NCBI RefSeq assembly: GCF_000143415.4
Contig: NW_003314273.1
Coordinates: 2,236,597 to 2,300,596 of the forward strand
DNA: 64,000 bases
Direction: 5' to 3'
Source: Selaginella moellendorffii
Lineage: Eukaryota > Plantae > Lycopodiophyta
The position numbers were made by a program, and so were the translations under genes. Of this stretch, positions 34,333 through 62,160 are shown in pieces. The notes beneath the pieces are model-generated. The model was given only the letters and a program-made list of their open reading frames with translations, made no database searches and was not told the DNA's origin. The number at the start of each line of letters is the position of its first letter. Position 1 is the stretch's first letter.

Positions 34333-35787
34333 CTAGATGGCGCTCCCAAAGGGGGCTCTGTGAGGAGTCCCCTTTCGCCGCTTGGCGGTCCTGGTGGGCG
34401 GCGGTGTGGGCGGCGATAGCTCGGGCGAATTCACCGCCATGGGACTTCCCGGCGGCTTCTTGGATTTCACCACGCGCGCCGCCGCCGCCGCCTCTTCCAT
34501 GCTCACGCTCGGCGACGGCGATGGCGATGGCCGCCCCAGCTTGAGCGTCCCCAGGCTCCTCTGGATGGAGCTCGTGTCGTGATCGATGACTGGAATTTGC
34601 GACCGAGAGGTGCTCTTGGCGATGGTATCCGCTAGATGATCCTCTTCTTCCTCCCGCGATCGCGAGCTCTGGCTCTGCTGCTGGTGCTGGTGCTGGTGAT
34701 GATCGATGTGGTGCTCGCCCGCGGTTGTGCCGCTCTTGCGCGACGATCGCGTCCTCTTTCCTACAATCGTGCTCCCTCCGGAGCTCGTCTCCTCGGAGAC
34801 GACGCTGCTCCTCGTGGGAATCGCCGGCGCTAGAGGGCTCTCGACGTGATCCACAGCCGCCATGGCGGTCGTGACGCTTCCTTGCTCGTGAGAAACCTCT
34901 TGTTCTTGGCCGTGATGATCATCGGAGACTTGCGGATGGTGATCCTCGAGAATTTGCTGCTGCTGCTGCTGTGGCGGCTGTGGATTCTTGGGCGGCAAGT
35001 GGAAGGTCATGTCATTGTGGCGTCGGATTCCGGTCAACTGGAAACGATCAAAGCAAAACTTTTAGTTGGAGATCGAGCAAAGCTTCTCGGTGGAATGGAA
35101 AGAAATCCGGTGTTTCTCTTACCTTGCAGCCGAGTGAGCAGTAGCGAAAGGTGTCGAGCAAGCTCCGGTCGCAAATCTCGCAAGTTTTGGTGACGCCCTT
35201 GGCGTGGCGGGGCTGCGGCCGCGCGTTTAGAAACACCACTCTCGCGCTGTTGATGATGTATGTTTGCACTCCTCCCAAATCCAAGACCTTTTGGAGCTCC
35301 GATACGCGGACAACGTCGTGGTAGGACGACCTCCGGATCTACACTCGCCAAATCGCACAGAAAGATTAGAACTTTGGCTCAAGAACAGTGGTTTTCTGAG
35401 TTGATCGATCGATTCTCACCTGGACAACGTGATGATCGCGGTGCTGTGGCGAGCAGCCCGAGCAAAGCGCCTCTCCTCGGCAATCCAGGCAGTAGAGATT
35501 GCACTCGTTACGGTTGCTGTCGCCATGGACCTCGCAAGTGTCGAAGAATTTGGTGGTGAGAAGAGGCCGCAGCCACAGCGGTCCAATTTGGTATCCGGGC
35601 TTCTGGGAAGAACAAAAGAGAGAAAAAAAATCGGTGAGATTCTCGGCCAGAGTGAAAAGAATTCTCGCTTTTACCAACATTCATCTACACTAAAGAAATC
35701 TACTCGGGGGAAACTTACCAATTTCTCCAATTTCGTGGGCAGGAGGAGCTCCGCGTTGTAAGTCTGGCGGTCGAAATTCACCACCAT
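34333..35787 (-). CDS. PLATZ transcription factor 1
   Basis: Exons 35787-35719, 35602-35420, 35338-35123 and 35037-34333. [62 protein letters not shown] and C-terminal [12 protein letters not shown]. Confidence 0.93.
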
Positions 35788-37856
35788 CGCTCCCAAGCTC
35801 GATTCTTCCTCCCGATCGATCGATGAGGTGCTACGATCGCACGCGAGAATCGCGTGGAAATTGGGTGCTCTGTTCTTCCCCTTGTGTGGCGGCGAATTTC
35901 CGGTCCCCGCGTAATGCACGTCAATGTAGCTCTCGCTCTCACAATCGCGAGCGCTGCGATCGCTCACGCCGCCCTGGCCGCCACCACCGACACGAAATGT
36001 GAGCTAATGCAGCATCGCCGGGGCCCAAATCCGCACTTGGGCGCTGCCAATTCGCCCCGAAATCGATCGAATTCTCGCGCTTCCTGCTCGTGGGCCGTCG
36101 CGGCGCGAGCGTTTCTGCCCAGCCAAGACGAAGATTTTCCCTCGACTGGGAGCAAAGGAAAAAGCAAACGCCTCGCGGCTCGCGAGAGAGTGGAGTGAAA
36201 AAAATCGGCTAAAAACTAGGCTTTGCTTCTCTCCACAATGAGGGAAGACCAAAGAGTAGAGGCGGCCCCCTTAGAGGCACAGCCTCTTTGGACCGCGCCA
36301 GGCGCATCCGACGGTCAAGACGACGACACGTCGCTGGCCAAAGCAAAGGAGAAGATTCTCGCGCCTGCTGTCGTGGCGCCCGGCTATTGCGTCTCGCCCG
36401 GCTTCTCCGATGCCCGGCAACTTCGTAAGCCATAGCATGATCGAATCGGAGGGGCACGGGCTCCCCACGTGGACGAATTGCGTGCGCCGATGACGTGGTG
36501 TGCTGTCATCCCCGTGGCGGCGGGGGTTTGGTGAGGCAATGCTGCCGTGGCTTGCCACGACGGACGTTGATGTGGACGTGGCCAAGGTTATAAAGTCCAA
36601 GCTGGCGCGTGGACTGACTGGACTAGCGTTGACTCTCTACTTTTCATGTTTACTTCGAAGCTTCATGTCATAGCGTCCTTTGCCGACTTTGAATGGTCGT
36701 ATCACTATGAAGCTGCGGTGTAGCTTCATCGTGGAAGCTTTTTTTCTTGTGGGAAAAGAAAATACATTTTCCCAATCCTTGTGTATGTGAATCTCCACGA
36801 GCCGTCGTAGAAGATCCTACTTACAAGTTACAAGCTTTTCCACGTCTCTCGCGTCTCCAAACTACGACAACGCACACACACACACACCTTTGTAGATAGA
36901 TAAATAGATAGCTGTTTATGAAGGTCATGGAGATAAAAACGAAAGAAAACAAGAGTAAAACGATGGCTTTGAATTTTACCCATCGCACAAAAAAATAAAG
37001 ATTTGATCACATCGACTCCTCTCTCTCTCTCTCTCTCTGTGCTTGATTGATGTCAAGCAAGGATAGAAAGCGGCAATTTGTGCAAAGTTTAGACACGCAA
37101 GGATGATCGTTAGGTGTGTGACGAAAAGGGATTCGCATTTCTTCTTTCTTTTCTCTCGGCGGCCATGTCATTACGGAAATCCATGGGTGACACGGCACGA
37201 CGACCCCGGCAGCCAATCCCCGCCCTTGGCGCCTTTTACACGACACGTATTCCAGAGTTGACCCGGAAGCTACGAGGTCAGCCACGGTCAACCCCGCGTT
37301 TTCTAGGGCTGGCTTCGGCAAACAAACTACCAAAAGTGAGGATTCATCTGGGTTTGGTAACGCTCTGGTTTAACAAGAAAAGCTTTTGCTTTGTTGGTGA
37401 ACTAACGGACAGCACAGGTTTGGTCGTCTATAACACTTGGCATTTTAAAAGGTCCACGTATATAACCAAAGGTATATTCGTATACTGTAGAAAGGAAGGG
37501 AATAAATCTAAATAATAAACTAGATTGCAACCAAGGATAAGATCAACAACGTGTTACTTATATCCTCCATGCAAAGCAAAGGAACAAAAAAAGAGACTGT
37601 GGTGGAGGAATTGGGGGTCCAGTGTGACATCACAAATCACGCCAACAATTGGCAATTTGGCGGGCGGATTTTAAGTGGAACTCTCTTCTGTGACTATGCT
37701 CTTCTGCGGTGACTCAAACCATCTATCTTTCTTTTTCTCACTCTCACTCATTCATGCATTTATCAGTGTAATTTACAATAATAGCTGGGTAGATTGTTCC
37801 ACAGGAAAATTTATTATTGATATAGAATAGTGTTTTTTGGAATTTTTTTTGGATTT

Positions 37857-38753
37857 TTAGAGAGGTGGCGCCCTCTGAGGTAAACCCTTTCGTCGGCTGG
37901 GATTCCTTCTGTCAATGTTTGCGATAATGGGTGGAGGCGTTGGAGGCGACAAGCCGAGCAGCGTGGAGTCTGGAATTTTAGCGGCATTGATCCTGCTGCT
38001 GCTGCTGCTGCTGTCGGTGGCACTGGCACCATCAACTTTGCGATGATCCATGAAATCCTCGTATGCTTCGTGATCCAGTTGCTGTTGCTGTTGTTCTTGG
38101 TGTTGCTTTGGTTGTTGCTTGTTGCCACCATTCTTGTCTCGCTTGGGTTCCCGAGGCACGAATTTCTCGTTGAGATGGGTGATCCCCGCAAGCTAATCAC
38201 AAATCCATGGCAAGCATTACGGAGAGCAAAGAAAGGAAGGCGAACCTTGCAAGCCAGGGAGCAAAAGCGGTAGCTTTGTGGCAGGCTCCGCTCGCAGATC
38301 TCGCAAGTCTTGAGCGATGGTTTCACGGGCTTGATCTGCGGCCTGTGGTGGAGAAACACGACGCGGGCGCTGTTGATCACGTAGGTTTGGACGCCCGTGA
38401 TGTCCAGCACCTTGTGGATCTCCGAAACTCTAATCACATTGTGGTAGGACGAGCGTCTGATCTGGAAACAATGATCCAGAGTTATAACTAGAAAAATTAA
38501 AACCAATTTTCTATGATGGTGATGATTTGATCAAAACGTGATCATCACCCACCATGATATAACTTGCCTGGAGCATACGGTGATTTCGATGGTCAATCGT
38601 GCACGGGCAGCAAATTGCCTGGCCGGGGCAATCCAGGCAGTAGAGATTGCACTCGTTGCGGCTCAAATGTGGGTGCTTTTGGCACGAGTGGAAGAAATTG
38701 GTGTGGAGGAGTGGCTTGAGCCATCGCAGGGGATCATCGCAATTCCGGGACAT
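37857..38753 (-). CDS. PLATZ transcription factor 2 (tandem paralog; start codon uncertain)
   Basis: Exons 38753-38568, 38461-38246 and 38192-37857. Same PLATZ motifs, ending [10 protein letters not shown]. First intron is GC-AG. Confidence 0.9.
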
Positions 38754-40135
38754 CCCAATTGTTTCTAAATCAAGCAATCGATCGATCGATCGAATCTCCT
38801 ACAATGGCCACATTGTCACCTAGATCGCAGCGAGATTGGCGCATACCTTTCAAGTCTCTGCTCGATCAATCAATGTGGATCGAAGGATCGAAGGAAACGA
38901 AGTCGCCTGAGTGAGAGCGCGCTCCTCTCTGCTCGATCGTGCAATGTGGGGAGGAATTGAAGTGGGGATTGTGGGGAATTAGGTGAAGTGGGGGTGTCAA
39001 GGGTGGGGAATTAGGCGAAACCAACCATCGCCATCCCCGCGATTTACCCTTCGTGCGACTGCGGCAAAATGTAGGAAGCTACCGCGCCCGAAAATTCCAT
39101 ACCGCGATCGATCACTCACGATCTCGCGCGCCGAGGGAGAGTTCTAGTGCGGCGATAAAACCGGGACGAATCCTGGCAAATCTAGGGCGCAAAAGAAGAG
39201 AAAGCCGTGGCGACTACCGCCTCCTCCATCATTGGTGAGGAACGAGAGCACTGAGGAAGAGGGAGACGTACGGAATGCGACCGGCTGGAGCCGGTTTGCC
39301 CGCGAGAGAGATTCTCCATTTTCATGCCACGTCATGAGCTTTATGGACGGCGGCGGACCAGGTACTCTTTTGGCCGTGGGGCTGACGTGGCAAAAGCGAC
39401 CCAAATAATTGGCCAGTGGAGGACCCTTTCAAAGTTATGAATTTGGGATTACAAGGCTTTAGAGGAAGAGAACTGGACGAAGTCTTTTCTCTTTGATTGT
39501 TTGACCCAAAGACAAATTTTTTTTAAAAAAAATTTAATTTTTTTTTTTTTTGTTTTTTGTTTTGGCGCTGAGAGATTGAGTGCTTGGTTCGTGCTGCTGG
39601 TCCCCCCGAAAGATTGGGCCTTTCCCCTTTTTTTTAATTTGGCGAGAGAGCAAATGCGGTGTCGTAGCTATCAAAGCCAAAACGAACGAGAACAAAATTG
39701 GAAAAGATGAACGTACTACAATAGATTGCGAGCTAAACTACACGCAAGAACGACGAGCCCTCCAATTCCAGGCTCCAAAAGTGGCAAAGGATCGCATATA
39801 GATATAATACTTTGGGAAGTGGAAGCTCCTAGCCCCCTTGGGCTGGAAATCTGGAAAGGGAGAATCTCTAGAGAGGAGCTAAAGCTGTGAGAAGCCTTTG
39901 CACGTACGGGAAAGAAGAATTGGAGGCTGGGAGATGAGCTAGGTATCGCTATTGCAAACATGACTCACTCTGATCATGAGCAGCGATCAAGAGCCACATT
40001 GTGGAGTTCTCATTCCATCTCCAATTCGTCACAGCAAATGGTTTGGGACCAGATTACCATAAGCTTGGTCGATTCCCTGGCAATCTGCCCTTAAGCCATG
40101 GATCATCGGTGTTGGAGATGAAAGGTTTGCTCTTT

Positions 40136-40231: not shown

Positions 40232-40899
40232 ATGGCGGATCGCAACTACACTGTCCGCACGCGCAAGTTCATGACGAATCGTCTCCTCCTTCGCAGGCAA
40301 TTTGTAAGTGCCGATCGTCAGTTTTTCGAGCTGATTTAACACGGTTGAGCAGGTCGTGGAGGTTCTTCATCCGGGGCGAGCCAATGTTTCCAAGGTGGGA
40401 TGGATTTGTAGATTGTTTTCGAGCCTAGGCTAAGAGAATGTGGGTTGTGGATCGGTCGGACAGGCTGAGCTCCGGGAGAAGCTGGCCAAGGTTTACGAGG
40501 TCCGTGATCCCCAGGCGGTGTTCGTGTTTGGGATGAGAACCAAGTTTGGCGGCGGAAAGTCGTCGGGATTCGGTCTCATCTACGACTCGGTCGAGGCTGC
40601 CAAGAAGTTCGAGCCCAAGTATCGGCTTGTCAGGGTGAGTGAAGTGAGCTCATGGTTTCTCGACTTGCGCTCTAACTCTGGAAGCTTTTCCCCTTGCATC
40701 TTTTGCAGAACGGACTTGCAACCAGGGAGCAGAAGTCGAGGAAGCAGCTCAAGGAGAGGAAGAACAGGGCCAAGAAGATCCGCGGAGTGAAGAAGGTCTG
40801 CTTTCTCTCTCTCTCTCTCTCTCTCCATTGATGTGCTTGCTTGCTCCCATTCAGGTCAAGGCTTCTGGAGAGGCTCAAAAGGCAGGAAAGAAGAAGTGA
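40232..40899 (+). CDS. RPS24: 40S ribosomal protein S24 (eS24), 5 exons
   Basis: [24 protein letters not shown]|[14 protein letters not shown]|AELREKLA...[30 protein letters not shown]|[23 protein letters not shown]. Confidence 0.96.
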
Positions 40900-41454
40900 T
40901 GTGATTTCCAGGTAGTTTTCTTGAAATTAACCGGGCTTAGCGCGAGGCTTTCTAAGTCAAAAGAAGAAGTGTCGAGATCAAATGTATTCTCTCTCTCTCT
41001 CTCTCGCTTTCTTTCCAAGCATCAAGCGTCTCGTGGTGTGTATTTACTTTCCAAGCGTCAAGCGGCTCGTGGTCTATGAGTTTTTCGCTGCGTCAAAGGT
41101 TATGGATACAAGAGCGGAGATAATTCGTGAAGAACTTTTTCAAGGTTGTAAAGATTTGGATCCAAAGAAGCAACACCACGTTTTCTTTAGTGTGATCGTG
41201 TCTTACGACTGTCGTGACAATGTATAACATGCGACAACAAAGAGGAAAGCAATTCTAACAGTGATTTCAATAGGATTTTATAGAAACCTGCCGGGAGAAT
41301 GTTCCTGAAAATTTACATTGAAAATATCTTAATCGATTTCGGACCATAGGTTTTTATAGAAAGGTGGGATGGATAGATTTAGCACCAAGCCTTTGTATAA
41401 ATCCTGAGGAATTCTAAACGTAAAACATCTTTCATTTGATCAATCAATTTTCTA

Positions 41455-42033
41455 ATGGCAACTTCAGTGGTGTCTTCCTTGGTATTTTTCTCCTTGTTGG
41501 CTCAAGTTTCTGTGGGTTTGCTGGTACAGTACGGTTCCACCACGGTCGGGAATGGCAATTTCATCCCCTTGAGCAGTACTGACGCGGCCCCCACTGTTGA
41601 TATCCAAGGATTTGGGAAGAATGGCACTGCTCGTCTTTTCTCGGTGGTCATGGCGGATCAAAAGGCACTGGTAGCACCAAACAAAGTTTACCCCTACATC
41701 AACTTCTGGATCGCAAACATCCCAGCGGGTAGCACTGGTAAGTGTAGAACAAGACTAAGACAAATCTATTGATCATGGCTTGGCTTTGCAGGAGCTGTGA
41801 AGAGCAGCATTTTGGAGCCTTATGTTGCTCCTTCCAATACCAGCAAGAACATCCCATACCAAAATCCATTCAGTGCAAAGAACCATACTTACGATTTTGT
41901 GCTAGTCCCGCAGAGGAATCCCTTGGTGAAGCCCATGGATAGTCGAATTGTCAACTCGCTGGCGGATATAATTCAGCAGTACCATTGTGGAAGCCCTCTC
42001 CAGACTGTCTCCTTCACCACCTCGCTCGCTTGA
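41455..42033 (+). CDS. Divergent PEBP (FT/TFL1/MFT-superfamily fold) with N-terminal signal peptide, 174 aa
   Basis: Exons 41455-41737 and 41792-42033 (GT-AG). VQYG..VGNG..IPLS..PTVDI.G..LFSVVMAD..YINFWIANIPA..Y.AP..HTYDFVLVPQ..N..Y..GSP..F follows the PEBP motif order. Confidence 0.8.
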
Positions 42034-42675
42034 TGTCATTCACTAAAAGGTTGATATTTATCAACTTAGCTTAATGAAATATAATAATTTTAGGTCGATC
42101 AAAGAATCAAAACGTATGAAAGATGGATCATGAAAAACATCCATCATGCCTGATTCAAGGAGCACAGGCATCGAAAACTTGTGCATGATTGCAACTCATG
42201 GATTACGTGCTGTGATCAACAAGAACATCGCACCATGGGATCAACTTCGCCCATTTTTGGAAGTTTGAATGACATTCTCCCCTACTGCGATGATTCTTAA
42301 AGCTACGACTGATCCGCCAGTAAGTGTAAAATTTGTCTCCCTCGACACTTTCTTTGTATCCGGAGTAGCCGAGCCCCTACTTGAAATGTCCATGGATTCC
42401 AAAATCACACCTCTTGCTGACCACCTGTTTTTTATGCTCGTACCTTCGCAAAACAACATAGCAATAGTTCAAGAAAAACAAATGAAAGAAAAAGGACACA
42501 GACGTACCGCATACGAGAAGGGACTACGTCCATCCAATTCCAGGCTCCAAATGTTGCCATTCTTGTCGAGAATTCTATGGCCCAGCCCAGGAGAGACTCT
42601 TCCCGTTTAGCCTACAGCTCCTCGTAGTATATACACGCGTTACGTAAAAAGAGGAATGGAGCGAGAGAATGCCTA

Positions 42676-45600
42676 TTATGCAGGTGCCCTGGACCTTGCG
42701 CGATTGATAGCTTGCCTGTAAAGCTCGATGTACTGATCAGCGGAGGAGTCCCAGCTAAAGTCTAGCCGCATTGTCTTCTTCACAAGCTGTTGCCACCACC
42801 CGGGCTTTTCCAAGTAGTACTTGATTGCACGATCTAGTGCGTAGTTCAATCCCTGCGATGCAAACAATGGTTTATGGAAAAAGTATTTCAGAAAACAGCT
42901 AGTTGTACCTGAATTTCAGCCGCCGAGAAGCTAAATCCATTGCGTTTTTCTTCCGAAATCGTCGTGTCATCGACGTCAAAGACACTGCACAGAACGTAGG
43001 AGAGCGTCAAGCAGCTCGTCATCATGCATTTGACGGAGAAAAGAACAAAGAGAAAAGAAAGACCTGTCATTTAGACCGCCTGTTCTACGTACTACTGGGA
43101 TGGACCCATATCTCATGGCAATCATCTGCGCGACAAGGAAAGGATCTTCTTAGTTTGACAATTGAGGATAGCTACTTGCCTGAGTCAGTCCACATGGTTC
43201 AAACACCGATGGAATGACGAAAATGTCCGAAGCCGCGTAGATTGAATGTGCCAAAGGCTCGTCGTACTTTAGCAGCAACCGCACATCCGAATGGCCTTCA
43301 AACTTGTAAGAAAGTGCTTCAAATTCACGCTGTAGTGCAGTAAAATGTCAGGAACTGAAAAGATGAAAAGAAAGTCACTCGAACGCACCTGAATTTCAGG
43401 AACAGGACTAGACCCCAGCAGAACAAATTGTCCACCTTTTTCTGCAGTGTGATATATTGCATGTCTTATCAAATGTACGCCTTTCTGGGGTACAAGCCTA
43501 GTGATGCATCCTATCTGAAATCCTGGTCTTAAAATCTCACAAAACAAGAATAGAAAAAAACTTACCAAGGGCCGTTTTTTGTCGACATTTAGTCTCAATT
43601 GAGATTGAAGAGAAGCCTTGTTGGCTGCTTTGCCACTCAAATCTTCTGCACTGTATTGGTGCTGCAGTATAGGATCATATGAAGGATCCCAGGCTTCAAC
43701 ATCAATTCCATTCAAAATTCCATAGAACTTGTTTGAATGTACAGAGAGTGCGACTTGCAGTCCTCGGCCGGCCTGCACAACAAAGTCGTCAAGTCAAGTC
43801 ATACGTAGTGATTAATTCTATTCTCAGTGAGTCAGATGTGTACCTCCGGCGATCTGACTTCTTGAGCATAAGTTGGAGAAACGGTCGTGACAATGTTTGA
43901 GAAAACGATACCTCCCTGAGAATAAAACATGAGAAAAACAGGAGGACTGTAAAAATACCACCTTCAACAGGTTCACTCTATCATGCATGAAACTGTCCTG
44001 CATTCGATCCTGTCTGAATTGCTGCTGCACGTTCAAGCCAAAGGCAGCCAAAGCTGCAGGAGATTCCGTGCCTTGATACTCAAAATTGTGGCATGTGAAT
44101 GCCAACCGAGCTGAATTCAATCCTAAAGGAACATAAATGTCCCAATATAATGGTGCCTGAAATGTGAAGTTAGTCCGAAACCAAGTTACATAAGAGTAAA
44201 ATACATACTACTGCTGCAGAAGTCCAGTCATGGCTGTGGATTATGTCAGGCCTTTTGTTGCTTTGCAGAAGAAACTCTAAAGCAGCACGGCAGAAATACG
44301 TAAACCTCCTAAAGTCGTCTCTTTCACCATAGACGGTGCGCCTCGTGAAGAAATTTGCCGGATGAAAGGGCTCAATAAAATAAACAGGGAGACCTGCAAG
44401 CGCAAATTGCTCAAGCGTAACAAGTATGACGAGATTCTGATCACCTTCAACAGTGCCCAGCCAAACTTTGTTTTTGAAAGTTTTGTTGTCGAAAAACGAT
44501 AAAAGCTCCATATCTAGAACCTATCAAGTAGAGATGGCTGAGGGACCGGTAGAAAAAATCAATACCTTCAAGTTTTTTATGCGATCGTAATCCATGCAGT
44601 CGTATTTGGGAAGGATGATCTCAACCAAGTGGTCTTTCCTTTGCAAGGATCGGCTTAAACCAGTCACAACATCCCCCAGGCCACCAACCTGGTAATACCA
44701 AGATTGGTTATATCAGACGCTTATACAACCACAATTTTACCTTCGCAACTGGTGCCATTTCTGCTGCGATGTGAACAACGTACAGCCCCGGCCTGCGAGT
44801 GAAGAATGCAAGAATGAAAAGGAAGCACTCTCATTCCAGACACTAACCTCTTTCGATCGTTGACAAGCTTCAAGAGACCAGACATGATCTCCTCGTTGCT
44901 CTTTTCCTGCAGCTGGACAAATGCATCTCGAAGTCGTGCATCTCTGCGCCATGCCATTAGCATTAGTTCCTCGCCATCCTCAACAGTGATAACTTTATCC
45001 AGCATCCACGCATCTATACGAAGATGTATACCCGTCCAGAAATCCCATGGCATTTCTCCTGCTGGAACCTGTAATATCCCCGACTTTTTTTCTGATTTCA
45101 GACGCTCAAGCCTGGCCTGAAAGCCTTCCACCTCCGCTTGATAAGTTTGCAGCTGTGCTCGTATTTCGGCATCCGATTCCAGTAGCCGGTGCTGTAACAG
45201 CTGAACCTGTTCCTTGAGAGCTTTCTTGTCAGCTTGAGCGTGTTCTAGAAGTATTTTCTGACTCTCGGCCTGAGCCAATTGTACTAGCAGCTTCTTGACC
45301 TGTTCTTGTAGCATGCGGTTCTCCAAAAGTAGCCTATCGTTTGTGCTTCCAACAGCTTCCGAGCCAGTCGTCGTAGGAGAAAGCATTTGCTCGGACAGTT
45401 TGAATGCTTCTGTAGCTGATAGCTCGGCAACTTGAAGCTCCATTTGCAGCTTACGAATATTTTCCTTGAGTGTATCGTTTTCAGCCTTTGCGTTCTTGAG
45501 GTCCGTAAGGGACACCGTGTTCTCTTCCAGCCTCGACTCTAACGACTGGAGCCTGTCTTGAAGCTCTGTTTTATCATTTTGTAGTTGTTTCAGCAGCTCA

Positions 45601-46590
45601 TCCTTGCTTCTCAGATCGGCAAGACTTGCTTTCAGTGATTCCACCTCCTCCTCAAATTTAGTACCTTTGAGACTAGAGCTTTTGGTTGTCAGGGCCTGTT
45701 GTTGCGAGTCCTCTTTCTCCTTCAGCTTCTTTTGGAGGATTTGCACCTCGTCCTGGAGCATTTCATTCTTTAATCTCTCTTGCTCGGCCAGCTTTATCTT
45801 TGCACTTGACTCGGCCAGCCTCGTCCGCAACACCTCTACTTCTGCTCGCAAGCTATCCTTCTCCCGGCGAGATTCCTGGAGGTCTTTGAGCGCTCGAGCT
45901 CGGACCTGGTTCAAGAGTAGAATATCTTCAACCAGAACATTTCAATCAGGACGTGAACACGATCGAAAACTCAAGGCCTGTTAAGGACAGTACCCACTTT
46001 TTTCGGCTTCTCTGATCATTAGCAGCAGGTCTTCAATGCTAACACTGAAGGACCGCTTCTCTTCCACGTCCAGACTTTCCTCAGTCTATACAAAAAGAAG
46101 GAAGAAAAGAACGTATGAGAAAGTTGGTATTTCAAACTGCTGCTATGGAGAACCTTGGAGTCCTTCGATGGAAAGAATGGACCGTTTGCCAGCATTTGGA
46201 CATTCTTCTCCCCCTCGGAGCCCTCATCTCTCGCCTCTTCCGATGGAAAATCCTCGGCATCAACCGCGAGACGCTCTCGGGCGCTCTTCTCCGCTTGTAA
46301 TCTTTTCCTGCGAGGTAGCGAGTCAGAGAAGAGAAAGAAGAAAAGCGAGAAAGAATGCTCTACAAGGATTTCGATGGATAATACCTTAGATTCTTGTGGC
46401 GCAGCCGGCAGGACGTGAAGACGAGCCTCGGGCATGGATTGCAATGGCCGATCCAGGAGTCCCCGTGCAGCTTCCTCAAGCTGGCGATGGAGCTGAGCGA
46501 TCGCGCCGCCGCGACGGTAATCATCCCCCCGGTGGTGAGGGCCATCTCTGTGCTCATCCAGAGAGAATTTGGGGCGGCATTGGCGATCAT
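42676..46590 (-). CDS. SS4: Soluble starch synthase 4 (GT5) with N-terminal coiled coil, multi-exon
   Basis: Transit-peptide-like start, long coiled-coil exon, [11 protein letters not shown]|[37 protein letters not shown] and [11 protein letters not shown]. Confidence 0.93.
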
Positions 46591-55512: not shown

Positions 55513-58159
55513 GGTAGTCACTACATGTGTGATCTCCTCCTTTCACCGGCGCTGCTGGAGCTAGATCCAGTGATCACGAACCCTAGCCTGGAACAGTAGG
55601 GGCCTCTTCCCTCTCTCGCCGGAGACAATGCCCCCGAAATACCCCCGACGAGGATCAATACCGAGAATGCTGCTGCGCAAGAAGATCCAGGCCACGGCTG
55701 TGCGCAATCTGGCGCTGGGGAATGCCGATTCCGAGCGGGGAGAGAGGCTGGGCTGCAAATCTTGGCGAAGACGAGGAAGAACCAGCAATGTGGAGCTCCC
55801 GGCACCGCCGCAGCCAAGCGGCGTCACACCTTTGCCCTAAGAAGCGCCATGGCTGTGCCCCCAGCTTCGAGCCTGACGAAGAAATTTCCACGCCCAGAGA
55901 AAAATGCAGGTACGTGTGGGAGAATATTCTCTTAGTCAGTGCACGAATCTGTTATTTACATTTTCTCCAAACTAGGTACTTTTCTTACTAGGCAAAATAC
56001 GTTGTGTAAGCTGATCTTGCGAATGGTCCAGATGCAAATTAAATGTGCTTTGGCATTATATGGCTATATTCATTTTCTTATTTTTATTATGTGGTTCAAA
56101 ATTGAATGTTGTTATGTGAGTGCATGGAATATATATTAATTAGCCCAAAAACCTTATATATGAGTGGTTCAAATTAAAATCAATCTAATAGTTATTAAAA
56201 TCCCATTACGTTAATATTAATATATGGCATTATAGCAATACATTTGGACTTCATATCATCCCTTCCTCTCGAAATGATGGAAGATAATCAGGATTCTATA
56301 GTGAATAGACCAGGATATGAAGGAACATCAGAAGAAAGCATTGATGGATATGTAAGTGGTGTTAATTGTTTTTGATCCCTTTATATGAAATGTTTTAGCT
56401 ATTGTATATGTATAATTTTTAGAGGATCAGCTTATTGAACATCATGTTGAACTTTATAAACTTGCAACTCAACTTGCCGCAACACTCGATACAGTCCCTT
56501 CCACTAAGAAAAAAGCCTCTTAAATAAACCATATACCATAGGATTAGGAAAACAAACTAATACTAAGTCATTCACTTTGTACTCCGTAGGTAGACAATAG
56601 TGGGAATTATAGTGCTGTTATTGCCCCACTTGTATGTGGCTCAAGTGTTTATTAAACTTTGTTTAGACCAGTGGAAGAATGTTTGTTAAATATTAATCCC
56701 AAAACTTAACATCGGTAGCTCGTGGCAATCGCAAAGGTAAACTCAACTCTGTTGGTAGTATCAGATTATGACCATAGAGGAGTTTATATAGTGAAGCACC
56801 AACAAAACTCTACACCTTTGTGATATACACATATAAAAAAAATAGCAAATAACCATCCCAATTTGAATATTGAAAATTTATGTACTTTGTTATTATCCCT
56901 TTGAAGGTCCGAATGAGCCATTTCACCAAACTATCAAACTATGGATGATAAACACTTGTGAAAGTGTGCCATATCCTCAATTGAGATGTTAAGATGTGAA
57001 ATGCATCAACTATAAATATGGGACTATTATCCAAAGAATTCGCTCTAAACATAAATACTAGAACACCACTCGATTGAGGGGGAAATATTCAACAACAGTT
57101 GTAGATGCACTAACAAGAGCTCCGACTTCCATCAACGAGGTATGTAGTTAGAAGTAATAATAACATACTCATTGCCAATAGTCGATTGTGGAAAATGCCC
57201 TATTAGATTAAATGCTACCAACTCAAACGAACAAGAAATTACAATTGACTATAGCCATCCTTTCGCAACACAAAGGGGAGTATTATAAGCTTGGCATCAA
57301 ATGTAGTTATGCATATATCGGATATTAAGTTACATCTCTACCAATAAAAAGACCTGTACAGCTTTTTAGTCACACAATACTAATCTATATGCCCATCTAT
57401 AATAAGAAAATCATGGTATGTGTGGAGAAAGCATGGAATAAAGATCGAAGGCACTATTAAATGTAAATAATCATTAACAAATGGTCTTCCTCAAGGCAAT
57501 ATTGAGAATATAAATACCAAAATGATAAATTATTAATAAGTGATACAAAATTCTCAAACTCATTCACAAAACTTTCGGATCCATAATTTAACCTTTTGAG
57601 CTTTGTCAAAAGAAGGTAAATTTAAAATAATAAGCTCATTAGAAACATGAAATAGAGCGAAGAAGGAAGAGGAGCTCAAGAAAAGGCATTAGCATTAACT
57701 ATAGAACTCCCTGGGTAATGAACAACATTAAAATCATATATCTGAAGCTTCAAAGTTTACCAAGCAATACGACCAACCAAGTTCTTCTGCTTCAATAACA
57801 AAGTAACTATAACATAATCATCTTCTAGTAATGTTTGAGAACTATGTATGTAGGTATGAAGTTTTTTGAAACCTTAAATTGCTGCTAAACACTCTTTTAT
57901 TGTGGAGTAGTTCACCTTTATGAGTTGTAACGTACACCTCATGTATACAATAGGATGACATTGACTAGGCACACTTAGATTCTCTTGCATTAACATGCCT
58001 CCAAAACCGATATCAAAAGCATCTATGTGCAAAATAAAAGGTCAAATATAGTCAAGACATGCCAAAACTAGATGAGTCATTAACAATTCTTTGAGATCTG
58101 TAAACGCCTGCTTACAGTCCATGGACTAAATGAAAGATGATATTAACAACTTCAATTAT

Positions 58160-58750
58160 ATGTAAGTAACCAAAGTGAACAATTTGAAAGATGATTTATA
58201 AGGGTTTAAATATAAAGGGAAAAAGCCCATGAACAAAAGTGTACCCCTTTTTTCAATCGGTTTTGGGATACTTGGGGTTAAGTGTTTTTGGGTTTGAATA
58301 GGGGTTAGATGACCTTCTGGGAAATTTAAATTTAAGATATTACATTTGGTATTAAAGAGGTGTTATGTTCAATTTTGTTGGTTAGCTAATGGAATTGCAC
58401 AATATATTGATTGAAATTTAGTAGGTCCAATTTGCGTTGGCTAGGCTTGACTCGAGGGGTAGGGTGTCAAAAGAGTAGAACTCTTGGGAGAGTGGTGGCT
58501 CTTAGCTTCCATTCACGAGGGCGTGAACTTGTAAGGAAACATGGTGGATTATAAAATCCAAAGAGAATGACTTTAAAAATGATTCATAAGGGTTTAAATA
58601 TAAAAGGAAAAGGCCCATAATAAGAATGCACCCTTTTTTCCAATCAGTTAATTGTTTGATCCTTATGGTTAAGTGTCCTTGGGTTTAAATAGTATTGGGT
58701 TGAGTGACCTTTTGGGAAGTCCAAATTCAAGAACTTACATAATGTTTGCA
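58160..58750 (+). repeat. Two copies of the AT-rich repeat module also seen at 4.5-7.0 kb
   Basis: aagggtttaaatataaa..gaaaa.gcccat at ~58201 and 58589; cattcacgagggcgtgaac at ~58510. Confidence 0.75.
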
Positions 58751-58859
58751 ATAGGATAGTACAATGAAAAAGATGATCAATGAAATGGTTGAGATATTGC
58801 ACTTTGCCTAAAACGTGCTATACATTATATATATATTTTAGAGTAACAGTTAGAATTTT

Positions 58860-60420
58860 ATCAGGATTAACTTACAAAGTTTTACAAGAAACACAGTATC
58901 CAAGATAAGTTGTGTCCTCGAACATAAACTGATACTTCAATTGCTTTAGCTTTAAATCAATTTTTCGCAACCAATCCAACATCTTACAAACATTATTAAA
59001 CAATGCTCTTATGACTTTCCGGTGGATGATGAATGAGGTTCTTTGTGATATATTAGGGTTGATTATTGACTTCATTGATGTTGTCTTGATCCACTTTGAG
59101 GGGATGTAAGAAGAGCATATCTAACCAAATGATATCACCAAAAACTTATAGAAACAAAAAGTGTATGAAAATCAATTTTGGGAATATCTTCCTCGGCTAT
59201 TGGCACTTACTAGTACTTAGAAGCAAAACTTCTCCCCAAATGATTTAGGAGATCAGTAATGTGAAGAAGACGGTACATATTTGGGATCGTCACTTTGTTT
59301 AATGAGTGATAGTTAATGCATAAATGAATACTCCCATCAAACTTCATCACAAGATGAAGTTCACATGCCTAAAAACTCTATGACTTTTGAATAACACCTT
59401 TTTCCAATATATCCTTGATGTTTGCATATAAAATTTTGATCTCTTTTGGTGATCAATGATGAACAGAAATCTTAATTAAACAAGCATCTCCAATTGAAAT
59501 AGGATAATAAGGTGCAATCTTGATCCTAAACAACAAATCAAATTTAAAGAGATCGACATACTCCTTTATGAGTTGGTTAACCCTTGCAACACAAAAACCA
59601 TCGAAGGGATTAAAAGAGGGAATAGAAGAACAACACAGAAATATAGGAAAAATAATAGGGAAACAAAAATGATGGAAGTAGAGATAGAAGAAAATGGATG
59701 AAAGGGAATGAAAGTGAGAGAAATAAAAAAAATATAAAAAAATATAAGATAAAGGGAAGAAGCCTCAAAATCACACTTGGTATGATTGTATCGTAACCAA
59801 TCCATACCAGGGATGAGGTCTAAAACTTGATTTGGCACCACCTATAATGACTGCAACTCAAGCTTGAGATTGCTAATATGCACAACTAGGTTTTCCTTAT
59901 CTCGTGTATATATATGTGTATGGCCATTGCCATAAAGAATGAAAATTAGCTCTGCAAATATAGATTACAATGTATGGCAATAGGTCAAGCAATAGAAGAT
60001 ATACTCGAGATTGTATCAACCAATATAGCAAGAATAATAGAAGACCTGGAAAATAAACACTTGATGAATTAGTATCGAGTGAACCCTTTAATGATACTCC
60101 TGAAAGAAAGATGAAAGAGTCACTAACTTATTGGCGTAAGAACCCTCCGCTACTCATGTAATTCCTTGTTTCTTAGAAACATCTCGGTATCTAAACCTTC
60201 CATTGCAATAGCACCAATAGAACATTGTTAATGCCAAGGTTTCCAACTAGGAAATGGAGGTCGCTAATTTGGAAAATGCCAACAACACCGATAAGTATGA
60301 CTAACTTCATTATATGCTCAACAATGGATATCACAGCTACAACTATGTCTTTGCCCTTGAATTTGGGCAGCAACAGCATCAACCTCTAATGGAATAAAAC
60401 CATTTCATACAAAAAGTAGA
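58860..60420 (-). mobile_element. Degenerate Ty3/Gypsy pol remnants
   Basis: DLIPGMDWL (retropepsin-like), IKDILEKGVIQKS and LKLKQLKYQF..TYLGYCVS (RT-like), and LPKFKGKDIVVAV (integrase-like), with many stops. Confidence 0.7.
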
Positions 60421-61711
60421 GTTAAAGGATGTGCAATGAAAAGTGGAAGATGTGATATTTTATAACATTGTACTAAGAAAAGAGCATTGTCAAGGGTGGC
60501 TGAAACAAGTGCACGCACAAGTTCCATAAGATCTTAATAAAGTGCTAACTACAACATTTTCAATTTGATTCATTCCAACATATTTGGCTTTGCACGAAGT
60601 AAGAGGTTTCGAAAGTGAATGCCAAATTGCATCATTGACTTAAATGGTCCTTGATGAAAACGATGGGAAGGCATCATCATAATCATTGGCATGTCCAAAT
60701 GTGTGTTGTTTGAAGATGTCTAAGAAAATGCTCCAATCTTTATAAATAGCTACACTTAAACCATTATACCACTACAGTGTCATCTCTTAGAGACACATAG
60801 AAAACTCACACAAATGTCAAGCATCATCCAAAGAATGATATGTGGCAATCACCATAAAGTGATCGAATTAATGGTACACATCATCCTCAAGATTCTCATG
60901 GAAAAATTCTGCCTGGATGTAAGGATTAATAGTAAGAGCAGAAGAAGTTATACCACATGCCGTGAATGCCACCATTAACTGAGTGTAATTGTTTAATTAC
61001 AGCTGCATGGCATCAAGCAACTACACCAACTGCTACTCCAAAGTCAAAAGAGGAGAAGGCTACTGCTTTGCCATGAAGATGAAGGAAAAAGAAAAATCAA
61101 AAGAGAAAAATTTGAAAAAGCTAAAGATTTAAACAATATAAAAGTTAAATTTAAACCAAAATTCCAAATTCAAGCACTTCTCAGGGACAATCAAAGTTGC
61201 CCCTCTCCTCCACCAATATGAGTGCATGGAATATAGAAGTTAGATTTTCTCCAAGAACTTTATAGCCTTGGAGAAGAGTAAATGATCTTTGCTACCATGA
61301 ACTCATGAAATGAAGACTTAGAAACTTACATGGAAAACTAATCTTATAAAAATATCATGGTTTTAAATGTAAGTGCTAAAAAAGTTTATTTCAATTCCAA
61401 TTTTATAATTATGCTTTGAAAGAATCAATGTTATACATGGCTGAAAACCCATATGTATGGGAGATTGTTAGAAAAAGTGGTAAAACATAAATAATTTTTT
61501 AAAAATTTCCATTTATAGAAATCAGCTATATTTTTTCCAAATATTATTCTGAAAATAAATGTGAAAATTAGAAAATAATCAAATATTTTTGTATAACTAA
61601 TTATAAGATAGTTTTAATTTCAGTTAATTTTTTTTACCATTTTTGGTTTGCTTCAGCAAACCTGTAGGGAAGTGGATATACCTAGAAGATGCTTGGATAT
61701 TCTAGGATATT

Positions 61712-61905
61712 TTACCATCTAACGGTTGTTATTCATTTAGATTAATCTTGTATTTGTAATTTATAAATATGTTTATAATTTATAAACTTTCTTAAACACT
61801 TTCTAGTAATTTTTTATTCTACCATCTAATGGTTGATATGAAATAAGATTAATCTTGTGTTTATAAATTATAAATATGTTTATAATTATAAAATTTTATT
61901 TAATC
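61712..61905 (+). repeat. Tandem duplication, ~108-bp AT-rich unit
   Basis: taccatctaa.ggttg.tat...agattaatcttgt.ttt.taa.ttataaatatgtttataatt occurs twice. Confidence 0.7.
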
Positions 61906-62160
61906 AATTGGATTAATAAATAAGAATAAAAATATTATTAAGCATAATTCATAACAAATTTTTGTGATAACCTATAGAAAAAAAAACCATATATGGGAAA
62001 AAAAACCAGTGTCGTATCTTTAGTAAGGAGATATAGTACTCACTTCCACGACAAAGATAGCCTTCTTGACAGCCTTGAGGGAGATGGCACAGGCTCCTCT
62101 GGAGGCAGCAGCCATTGCCAAAGGGTACTACTGTCAACTTCCCAGCCAAGATGAGAGATG

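What the first reader, a model, noticed from the sequence alone, without database searches (positions are those of the whole stretch)
41455..42033. Apparently secreted, pocket-remodelled FT/TFL1/MFT-like PEBP
Seen: an intact two-exon 174-aa ORF with PEBP motif order, a hydrophobic N-terminus (MATSVVSSLVFFSLLAQVSVG) and three N-glycosylation sequons (NGT, NTS, NHT). The conserved DPDxP reads DQKAL, YLHW reads YINFW, and GIHR reads ...SAKNHT after an insertion. Its one intron is phase 1 in a Gly codon just after NIPAGST. Known: canonical plant FT/TFL1/MFT proteins have no signal peptide and have four exons, with intron 3 in phase 1 in the Gly after DIPxTT; secreted PEBPs occur in animals (PEBP4) and bacteria (YbcL). 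Inference: a plant florigen-family gene lost two introns, gained a signal peptide and was redeployed to the apoplast, perhaps as a lipid binder, protease inhibitor or extracellular signal.
Basis: partly seen in the sequence, partly recalled or inferred. Interest (0 to 1): 0.8.

Follow-up and report, generated by a model that had tools for sequence, protein, structure and literature searches.

The report
Secreted-type divergent PEBP gene, Selaginella
This spikemoss gene encodes a protein with the fold of the flowering hormone FT that carries an export-signal-like leader and has lost the family's pocket motifs; it belongs to a multi-copy family found so far only in lycophytes, which papers on plant PEBPs do not describe and whose function is unknown.

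Summary
Window 41455-42033 (+) holds an intact two-exon, 174-codon gene: exon 1 41455-41737, GT..AG intron 41738-41791 in phase 1, exon 2 41792-42033. The window is Selaginella moellendorffii scaffold GL377577.1.

Pfam finds no PBP domain in this gene or in its full-length paralogues. Other evidence does place it in the PEBP family:
- A 23-sequence family profile hits rice Hd3a, TFL1 and FT at E 3e-20 to 7e-18.
- An AlphaFold model of paralogue P0002 (pLDDT 85.7) superposes on FT, TFL1 and Hd3a at Z 16.0-16.5.

The leader is signal-peptide-like. It evolves freely (dN/dS 0.6-1.3), whereas the mature part is strongly constrained (0.06-0.18). Three N-glycosylation sequons are conserved across the copies compared.

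The gene is one dispersed copy of a larger family:
- Selaginella has three subgroups, some in tandem arrays.
- Diphasiastrum has a less derived member that keeps GIHRY and YVHW.
- A search of 1.84 billion representative proteins found only these lycophyte sequences.

Three things remain unshown. Descent from the plant MFT lineage is plausible but unproven. No spliced transcript was seen, and secretion was not tested. The function is unknown.

This scan has already flagged the same family on other DNA of this genome (s1-420264, s1-432151, s1-430214).

The parts
41396..41402 (+). TATAAAT, a TATA-box-like motif 53-59 nt upstream of the ATG
   Evidence: Read from the sequence. This is a motif match only; no transcription start was mapped.
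41455..41737 (+). Exon 1: 94 codons plus the first base of the Gly95 codon
   Evidence: It is collinear with P0001/P0002. The 283-nt length is the same in five copies.
41455..41517 (+). Signal-peptide-like leader, residues 1-21. Likely cleavage after SVG, directly before the first beta strand (LLVQYG).
   Evidence: The mean Kyte-Doolittle value over 12 residues is 2.42, there are no charged residues, and a (-3,-1) site lies at residue 21. dN/dS is 0.75-1.28 here against 0.06-0.10 in the mature part for this copy. Model residue 1 aligns to FT residue 28.
41620..41628 (+). N-glycosylation sequon NGT (N56)
   Evidence: A sequon (NGT or NGS) is kept in every group A copy compared.
41656..41670 (+). 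DQKAL in place of the PEBP DPDxP motif; only the first Asp is kept
   Evidence: Alignments to Hd3a and FT and the family alignment.
41695..41709 (+). YINFW in place of YLHW; the pocket His is replaced by Asn
41716..41736 (+). NIPAGST, the counterpart of DIPxTT
41738..41791 (+). Intron, 54 nt, GTAAGT..CAG, phase 1, with an in-frame stop at 41770-41772
   Evidence: The same position and phase occur in groups A and B. No spliced read was seen.
41792..42033 (+). Exon 2: two bases completing Gly95, then 79 codons and the TGA stop
41836..41844 (+). N-glycosylation sequon NTS (N110), inside a 10-residue insertion specific to group A
41881..41889 (+). NHT sequon at the place of GIHR; the His and the following Tyr are kept, and Arg is replaced by Thr

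Best explanation
The gene is a functional, dispersed member of a family of eukaryote-type PEBP-fold proteins that bear a signal peptide and have so far been found only in lycophytes.

Inferred steps: the leader takes the protein into the ER and is cut just before the first beta strand. The mature domain of about 153 residues is N-glycosylated at up to three conserved sequons. With no retention or anchor signal visible, it is released to the apoplast.

Shown: the canonical anion pocket is rewritten. The Asp, the second His and the Tyr remain, while DPDxP, the first His and the Arg of GxHR are gone. A glycosylation sequon sits on the former GIHR. Phosphoryl-ligand binding and 14-3-3/FD florigen signalling are therefore unlikely.

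My best guess is that it acts outside the cell as a binding protein. A protease inhibitor in the manner of yeast Tfs1 and mammalian PEBP1 seems more likely than a small-ligand or lipid binder. The fold, the constraint and the leader features are shown; the localisation and the activity are inference.
For: Homology:
- P0001 and P0002 match exon 1 at E 1.7e-37 and 4.6e-35.
- P0002 against PDB sequences hits only Hd3a (4.5e-5), FT (3.6e-4) and TFL1 (2.6e-3) among PEBPs.
- The family profile A3 hits Hd3a at 2.9e-20, TFL1 at 6.8e-19 and FT at 6.6e-18, over the full length.

Fold:
- The AlphaFold model has pLDDT 85.7 and pTM 0.84.
- Foldseek gives TM 0.72-0.75 to FT, Hd3a and TFL1.
- VIA-align gives Z 16.0-16.5, rmsd 2.4-2.6 A over 137-138 of 153 residues.

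Selection: dN/dS is 0.06-0.18 in the mature part and 0.6-1.3 in the leader. All five copies compared are intact.

Leader: a hydrophobic h-region and (-3,-1) sites occur in groups A, B and C and in the Diphasiastrum member.

Secretory hints: sequons are conserved. Group C has a conserved Cys pair, one of them the last residue.

Intermediates: P0005, P0008, P0009 and P0011 pass the Pfam PBP gathering score.
Against: - Pfam PBP does not hit this gene or its group A paralogues.
- No signal-peptide predictor was available, so the leader was judged by rule of thumb only.
- About 9.2 million records were read from each of two RNA-seq runs. These gave no reads on the gene in one run and a few in the other. 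These few reads, and the contigs of a third run, cross the intron unspliced.
- The fold was predicted for paralogue P0002 (72% identical in exon 1, 91% in exon 2), not for the window's own protein.
- There is no evidence about function.
Confidence: 0.78

Rival explanations
1. This copy is silent or decaying. It would be a recently inactivated duplicate whose intact frame only reflects past constraint in the family.
For: There was almost no RNA coverage in the two RNA-seq runs, and the few reads and contigs present retain the intron. The copy is a dispersed singleton without the LTP neighbour that accompanies the tandem copies. One contig of run X2 suggests a variant copy that lacks exon 1.
Against: The frame, the splice sites and all three sequons are intact. 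dN/dS against every paralogue is 0.06-0.10 on branches with dS 0.6-0.9. Only about 12% of two runs from unknown tissues was read.
Confidence: 0.12
2. The hydrophobic N-terminus is not a cleaved signal peptide. It could be a membrane anchor, another targeting signal, or the result of a wrongly chosen start codon, so that the protein stays inside the cell or on a membrane.
For: No predictor was run. The n-region has no positive charge. The RefSeq model of P0009 starts differently.
Against: The h-region is only about 12-16 residues long, which is short for an anchor. Small residues at -3/-1 precede the first strand in all groups. The leader evolves freely but stays hydrophobic. 41455 is the first ATG of the ORF. 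The P0009 locus also has an intronless ORF with a signal-like start.
Confidence: 0.1
3. The family does not descend from the plant MFT-like lineage. It would instead be an older eukaryotic PEBP paralogue, or a gene transferred from an animal, nematode or microbe into lycophytes.
For: Group C member P0008 scores mammalian PEBP1 (50.7 bits) and the nematode protein Tm16 above Hd3a (39.2 bits). RefSeq names members after nematode secreted PEBPs. Only one intron is shared, and only approximately, with plant PEBP genes.
Against: Group A, the family profile and the least derived member P0011 all score plant FT, TFL1 and Hd3a first. The structural match is best to the plant proteins. There is no close relative outside the lycophytes among 1.84 billion representatives, and no bacterial-type match. 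The phase-1 intron lies next to the NIP motif, as in plants.
Confidence: 0.2

Closest known systems
Plant EuPEBPs (MFT, FT, TFL1/CEN; e.g. rice Hd3a 3AXY, Arabidopsis FT 1WKP, TFL1 1WKO)
   Same: They share the fold (Z 16.0-16.5, TM about 0.75), about 25% identity, a short C-terminus without the animal terminal helix, the (D/N)IP and LGSP blocks, and a phase-1 intron shortly after (D/N)IP.
   Different: This gene has a signal-like leader instead of the 27-residue N-terminal segment. It has three conserved sequons, two exons instead of four, and a 10-residue insertion before the GxHR site. DPDxP, the His of YLHW and the Arg of GxHR are lost. It gets no Pfam PBP hit.
Secreted animal PEBPs (human PEBP4; nematode TES-26, Ov16/'protein D', Trichuris Tm16 5TVD)
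   Same: They are PEBP domains behind a signal peptide that are exported from the cell. RefSeq names Selaginella group C members after them.
   Different: To my knowledge these keep the canonical pocket motifs. Similarity to Tm16 is lower than to the plant proteins for group A (Z 14.0 against 16.5). A signal peptide acquired independently is the simplest reading.
Yeast Tfs1 / carboxypeptidase Y inhibitor (1WPX)
   Same: It has the PEBP fold (Z 15.5) and is a documented protease-inhibitor use of that fold. This makes it a model for a possible extracellular inhibitor role.
   Different: It is cytosolic, and by my recollection it inhibits through its own N-terminus, which has no counterpart here. 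Sequence similarity is weak.
Bacterial periplasmic PEBP (E. coli YbcL 1FUX, YbhB 1FJJ)
   Same: They share the PEBP fold, and YbcL has a signal peptide.
   Different: They are much more distant (Z 10.0-10.3, TM 0.50; no sequence hit at E<1). A bacterial origin is not supported.

Membership tests
PEBP superfamily (Pfam PF01161 PBP) | Pfam PBP HMM hit above the gathering score (24 bits) | tested here: not met
   There was no hit, even at E 10, for either exon or for the full-length paralogues P0001 and P0002. Relatives P0005, P0008, P0009 and P0011 do pass (26-52 bits).
PEBP superfamily (Pfam PF01161 PBP) | Significant profile-level homology to proteins with solved PEBP structures, over the whole domain | tested here: met
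   Family profile A3 hits Hd3a at 2.9e-20, TFL1 at 6.8e-19, FT at 6.6e-18 and PEBP1 at about 1e-14. Profile positions 2-144 of 147 are covered.
PEBP superfamily (Pfam PF01161 PBP) | PEBP fold | tested here: met
   The AlphaFold model of P0002:22-174 has pLDDT 85.7. All top Foldseek and VIA-align matches are PEBPs, with Z up to 16.5. The test was done on a paralogue, not on the joined window protein.
PEBP superfamily (Pfam PF01161 PBP) | Signature motifs DPDxP and GxHR of the anion pocket | tested here: not met
   The gene reads DQKAL and KNHT. The first Asp, the GxHR His and the following Tyr are kept. The YLHW His is Asn.
Plant MFT/FT/TFL1 clade | Four exons with conserved internal exons of 62 and 41 bp (PMC6514984, PMC12193392) | tested here: not met
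   This gene has two exons of 283 and 242 nt. Diphasiastrum P0011 has three exons and group C has none of these introns.
Plant MFT/FT/TFL1 clade | Intron 3 position: phase 1, 10 codons after the D of DIP (from my recollection of FT exon sizes 201/62/41/224) | tested here: inconclusive
   The phase is the same. The position is 7 codons after the N of NIP in groups A and B, and 10 codons after it in Diphasiastrum P0011. The loop alignment contains indels.
Plant MFT/FT/TFL1 clade | Phylogenetic nesting within plant EuPEBPs | not testable with these tools
   No canonical PEBP sequence could be obtained by reference. The ranking of PDB hits is plant-first for group A and P0011 but animal-first for group C.
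Plant MFT/FT/TFL1 clade | Cytosolic protein without a signal peptide | tested here: not met
   The protein has a hydrophobic leader with a (-3,-1) site.
Classical secretory proteins | Cleavable N-terminal signal peptide | tested here: inconclusive
   It passes the rule-of-thumb h-region and (-3,-1) test, and the leader evolves under relaxed constraint. Neither SignalP nor any experiment was available.
Classical secretory proteins | Conserved N-glycosylation sequons or disulfide cysteines | tested here: met
   Three sequons are kept in all group A copies compared. Group C has a conserved Cys pair that includes the C-terminal residue. Whether the sites are occupied was not tested.

The most novel reading that the evidence does not exclude
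Lycophytes evolved an extracellular branch of the florigen-fold family. The proteins would be glycosylated and amplified, and would work in the apoplast as a new class of plant protease inhibitor, or as a secreted ligand or carrier. In some loci they are duplicated together with lipid-transfer-protein genes. This would be a use of the PEBP fold not described in plants.
Probability: 0.2. Interest if true: 0.8.

Novelty: new variant of a known kind. Interest (0 to 1): 0.55.

Why it matters
PEBPs are studied in plants almost entirely as intracellular regulators: florigen FT, TFL1 and MFT. A published survey reports that lycophytes have only MFT-like EuPEBPs (PMC8408984).

A constrained, multi-copy PEBP clade of secretory type with a rewritten pocket would show that the fold was recruited to the plant secretory pathway. 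It would also give a natural series running from canonical motifs (Diphasiastrum) through half-changed ones (group C) to fully changed ones (groups A and B). That series could be used to study how the PEBP pocket is remodelled.

Practically, Pfam-based family censuses miss these genes. Several GenBank and RefSeq models of them are fused or mis-spliced.

Tried and rejected
- Pfam on each exon and on P0001/P0002 gave nothing.
- AlphaFold with a 4-sequence alignment gave pLDDT 34 and was unusable. It was replaced by a 23-sequence alignment.
- Word-index searches with P0011 and with profile A2 returned only family members and one ENA protein, P0021. No canonical plant or animal PEBP was available by reference, so no rooted tree could be built. 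The internal tree is unrooted and weak, except for the group A+B clade.
- A weak tblastn hit at 36088-36315 is noise; it contains stops.
- A search for an LTP neighbour in the window found none.
- Two paper look-ups for the FT exon/residue boundaries were not held, and a search on exon sizes found nothing. The exact position of canonical intron 3 therefore rests on my recollection.
- The scan for bacterial-type promoters and terminators is irrelevant in a plant.
- Rfam found nothing in the window.
- Group B member P0012 alone finds no solved PEBP.

Full report
**What is there.** The sequence and the ORF list show an ATG at 41455.
- Exon 1 runs to 41737 (283 nt) and is followed by the donor G|GTAAGT.
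- The intron is 41738-41791 (54 nt). It ends in CAG and carries an in-frame stop at 41770-41772.
- Exon 2 is 41792-42033 (242 nt) and ends in TGA.
- This gives 174 codons, with the intron in phase 1 inside the Gly95 codon after NIPAGST.
- A TATAAAT lies at 41396-41402.

The full-length paralogue P0002 stood in for the whole protein.

**Where the window comes from.** Neighbouring ORFs are plant genes: PPR, UDP-glycosyltransferase and PP2A-B56. A ribosomal protein S24 exon and two PLATZ genes lie upstream. The UGT protein is identical to one on Selaginella moellendorffii GCA_000143415.2, scaffold GL377577.1.

**Is it a gene?** Exon 1 finds two full-length S. moellendorffii proteins of 177 and 174 residues, P0001 and P0002, at E 1.7e-37 and 4.6e-35. 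They are collinear with both exons across the splice.
- Five genomic copies were compared: the window, L002, and three tandem copies in L007. All are intact, with identical exon lengths and the same donor.
- Exons are 84-88% identical without gaps. The intron is about 60% identical, with indels and lengths of 54-76 nt.
- Nei-Gojobori dN/dS was computed exon by exon. It is 0.06-0.18 for the mature part and 0.6-1.3 for the first 21 codons.
- This shows strong purifying selection on the domain and relaxed constraint on a leader that stays hydrophobic, which is the usual pattern for a signal peptide.

**Is it a PEBP?**
- Pfam's PBP model does not hit either exon, or P0001/P0002, even at E 10.
- phmmer of P0002 against PDB sequences finds only Hd3a (4.5e-5), FT (3.6e-4) and TFL1 (2.6e-3) among PEBPs.
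- A full scan of 1.84 billion representative proteins with a group A profile returned ten hits. All are from S. moellendorffii or the clubmoss Diphasiastrum complanatum. Four of them (P0005, P0008, P0009, P0011) pass the Pfam PBP gathering score.
- A 23-row family alignment (A3) used as a profile hits Hd3a at 2.9e-20, TFL1 at 6.8e-19, FT at 6.6e-18, fly CG7054 at 3.9e-17 and mammalian PEBP1 near 1e-14, over the full length. It hits no bacterial YbhB or YbcL.
- With that alignment, AlphaFold models P0002:22-174 at pLDDT 85.7 and pTM 0.84. A 4-sequence alignment had given pLDDT 34.
- Foldseek's best matches are Hd3a, FT and TFL1 (TM 0.72-0.75), ahead of animal PEBP1 (0.67-0.69) and YbcL (0.50).
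- VIA-align gives Z 16.0-16.5 and rmsd 2.4-2.6 A over 137-138 of 153 residues for FT, TFL1 and Hd3a. It gives 15.5 for yeast Tfs1, 13.2-13.8 for PEBP1 and 9-11 for the bacterial proteins.
- Model residue 1 aligns to FT residue 28. The leader therefore replaces FT's N-terminal segment and ends exactly at the first strand.

**The family.** S. moellendorffii has three subgroups.
- Group A includes this gene, P0001, P0002, P0003 and the three L007 copies.
- Group B is P0012 plus fragments. It has the same phase-1 intron and the same 242-nt second exon.
- Group C includes P0005, the P0008 cluster and P0009. These genes are intronless and read DRRASR, YVHYW and HxYEF.
- Diphasiastrum P0011 and P0020 keep DLDSSRP, YVHW and GIHRY and also have a signal-like leader.
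- This forms a graded series from canonical to rewritten pocket motifs.
- In an unrooted tree, groups A and B form a 100/100 clade on a long branch. The rest of the tree is weak.
- RefSeq and UniRef label members automatically as 'PEBP-like protein', 'protein D2', '26 kDa secreted antigen-like' and 'FLOWERING LOCUS T-like'.

**Signal peptide.** No predictor was available.
- By rule of thumb, every group has a 12-residue window with mean hydropathy 2.4-3.4, no or few charges, and small residues at -3/-1 between 15 and 27 residues in.
- P0009's RefSeq model is the exception. Its locus, however, holds an intronless ORF with a signal-like start.
- Group A's three sequons are conserved.
- Group C has a conserved Cys pair, one of them the last residue.
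- I see no KDEL/HDEL and no C-terminal hydrophobic tail, so default secretion is the simplest inference.

**Descent.** The evidence is mixed.
- The phase-1 intron lies 7 codons after the N of NIP in groups A and B, and 10 codons after it in P0011.
- Papers confirm the universal 62- and 41-bp internal exons of plant PEBP genes (PMC6514984, PMC12193392).
- From my recollection of FT exon sizes (201/62/41/224), canonical intron 3 is in phase 1, 10 codons after the D of DIP. That would match P0011 on the donor side and lie 3 codons from the position in this gene. This is suggestive, not proof.
- Similarity ranking is plant-first for group A, for the family profile and for P0011. For group C member P0008 it is mammal-first: PEBP1 50.7 bits against Hd3a 39.2.
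- I could not obtain canonical PEBP sequences by reference, so the decisive tree was not built.
- No close non-plant relative exists in the large library, which argues against a recent transfer.

**Expression.** About 9.2 million records were read from each of two RNA-seq runs of the species (roughly 12% of each run).
- One run gave no reads on the gene and the other gave a few.
- Those reads, and short contigs of a third run of uncertain type, cross the intron unspliced.
- The minus-strand neighbour from 42250 onwards is well covered and shows a clean 64-nt intron.
- Splicing and expression of this copy are therefore not shown. The gene model rests on comparative evidence.

**Literature.** Searches found no paper describing signal-peptide-bearing plant PEBPs. 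Bennett and Dixon 2021 (PMC8408984) state that lycophytes possess only MFT-like EuPEBPs.

**Earlier notes of this scan.** This scan has already flagged the same family on other DNA of this genome, and follow-ups reached the same reading (s1-420264, s1-432151, s1-430214).
- I saw their tandem and LTP-linked arrangement myself in L007, and two group C copies in L003.
- The window copy has no LTP neighbour.

**Verdict.** This is a real, constrained, secretory-type and highly diverged PEBP-fold gene, one copy of an amplified family seen so far only in lycophytes. Descent from the MFT lineage, secretion, expression and function all remain to be shown.

Noticed in passing
L007:10001-17782: There are three tandem repeats of an LTP-like gene followed by a group A PEBP-like gene, next to an HSP90 gene. 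GenBank model P0022 (257 aa) fuses the LTP-like exon to the PEBP gene, although each PEBP copy has its own ATG and leader (10583, 13516, 17201).
   Followed up: partly
P0003 and P0023 (S. moellendorffii GenBank models): Both models leave the family sequence after ..QRNPL and continue into unrelated text. The intact copies read on to ..TTSLH. These are probably mis-spliced annotations.
   Followed up: no
L005:5323-5838: An intronless 171-codon ORF with a signal-like start encodes the group C protein. RefSeq instead models it as 'FLOWERING LOCUS T-like' with a different 5' exon (P0009).
   Followed up: partly
window 41739 (run X2, record 7): A contig with 4 mismatches and 1 indel joins letters resembling 41404-41417 directly to 41739. 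This hints at a variant copy or allele that lacks exon 1.
   Followed up: no
window 42145-42600: A well-expressed minus-strand transcript has a 64-nt intron at 42439-42502 (CT..AC on the + strand). It is probably the 3' part of the starch-synthase-like gene at 43269-45914. Reads with five clustered mismatches at 42167-42208 and an opposite-strand joint 42145/42304 suggest a related copy or a fold-back.
   Followed up: no
window 35048-35680 and 37814-38777 (-): Two neighbouring PLATZ-type zinc-finger genes lie here, and a ribosomal protein S24 exon lies at 40440-40790 (+), just upstream of the PEBP-like gene.
   Followed up: no
window 56100-62000: An AT-rich stretch (GC 0.31-0.33) is 74-77% identical to L004:11100-16300 on the opposite strand. 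It is probably a dispersed transposable element.
   Followed up: no
P0021 (ENA, 182 aa): This is a PBP-domain protein of unknown organism with a Lys/Arg-rich tail. It was the only hit to the family profile from outside the lycophytes (E 2e-10).
   Followed up: no
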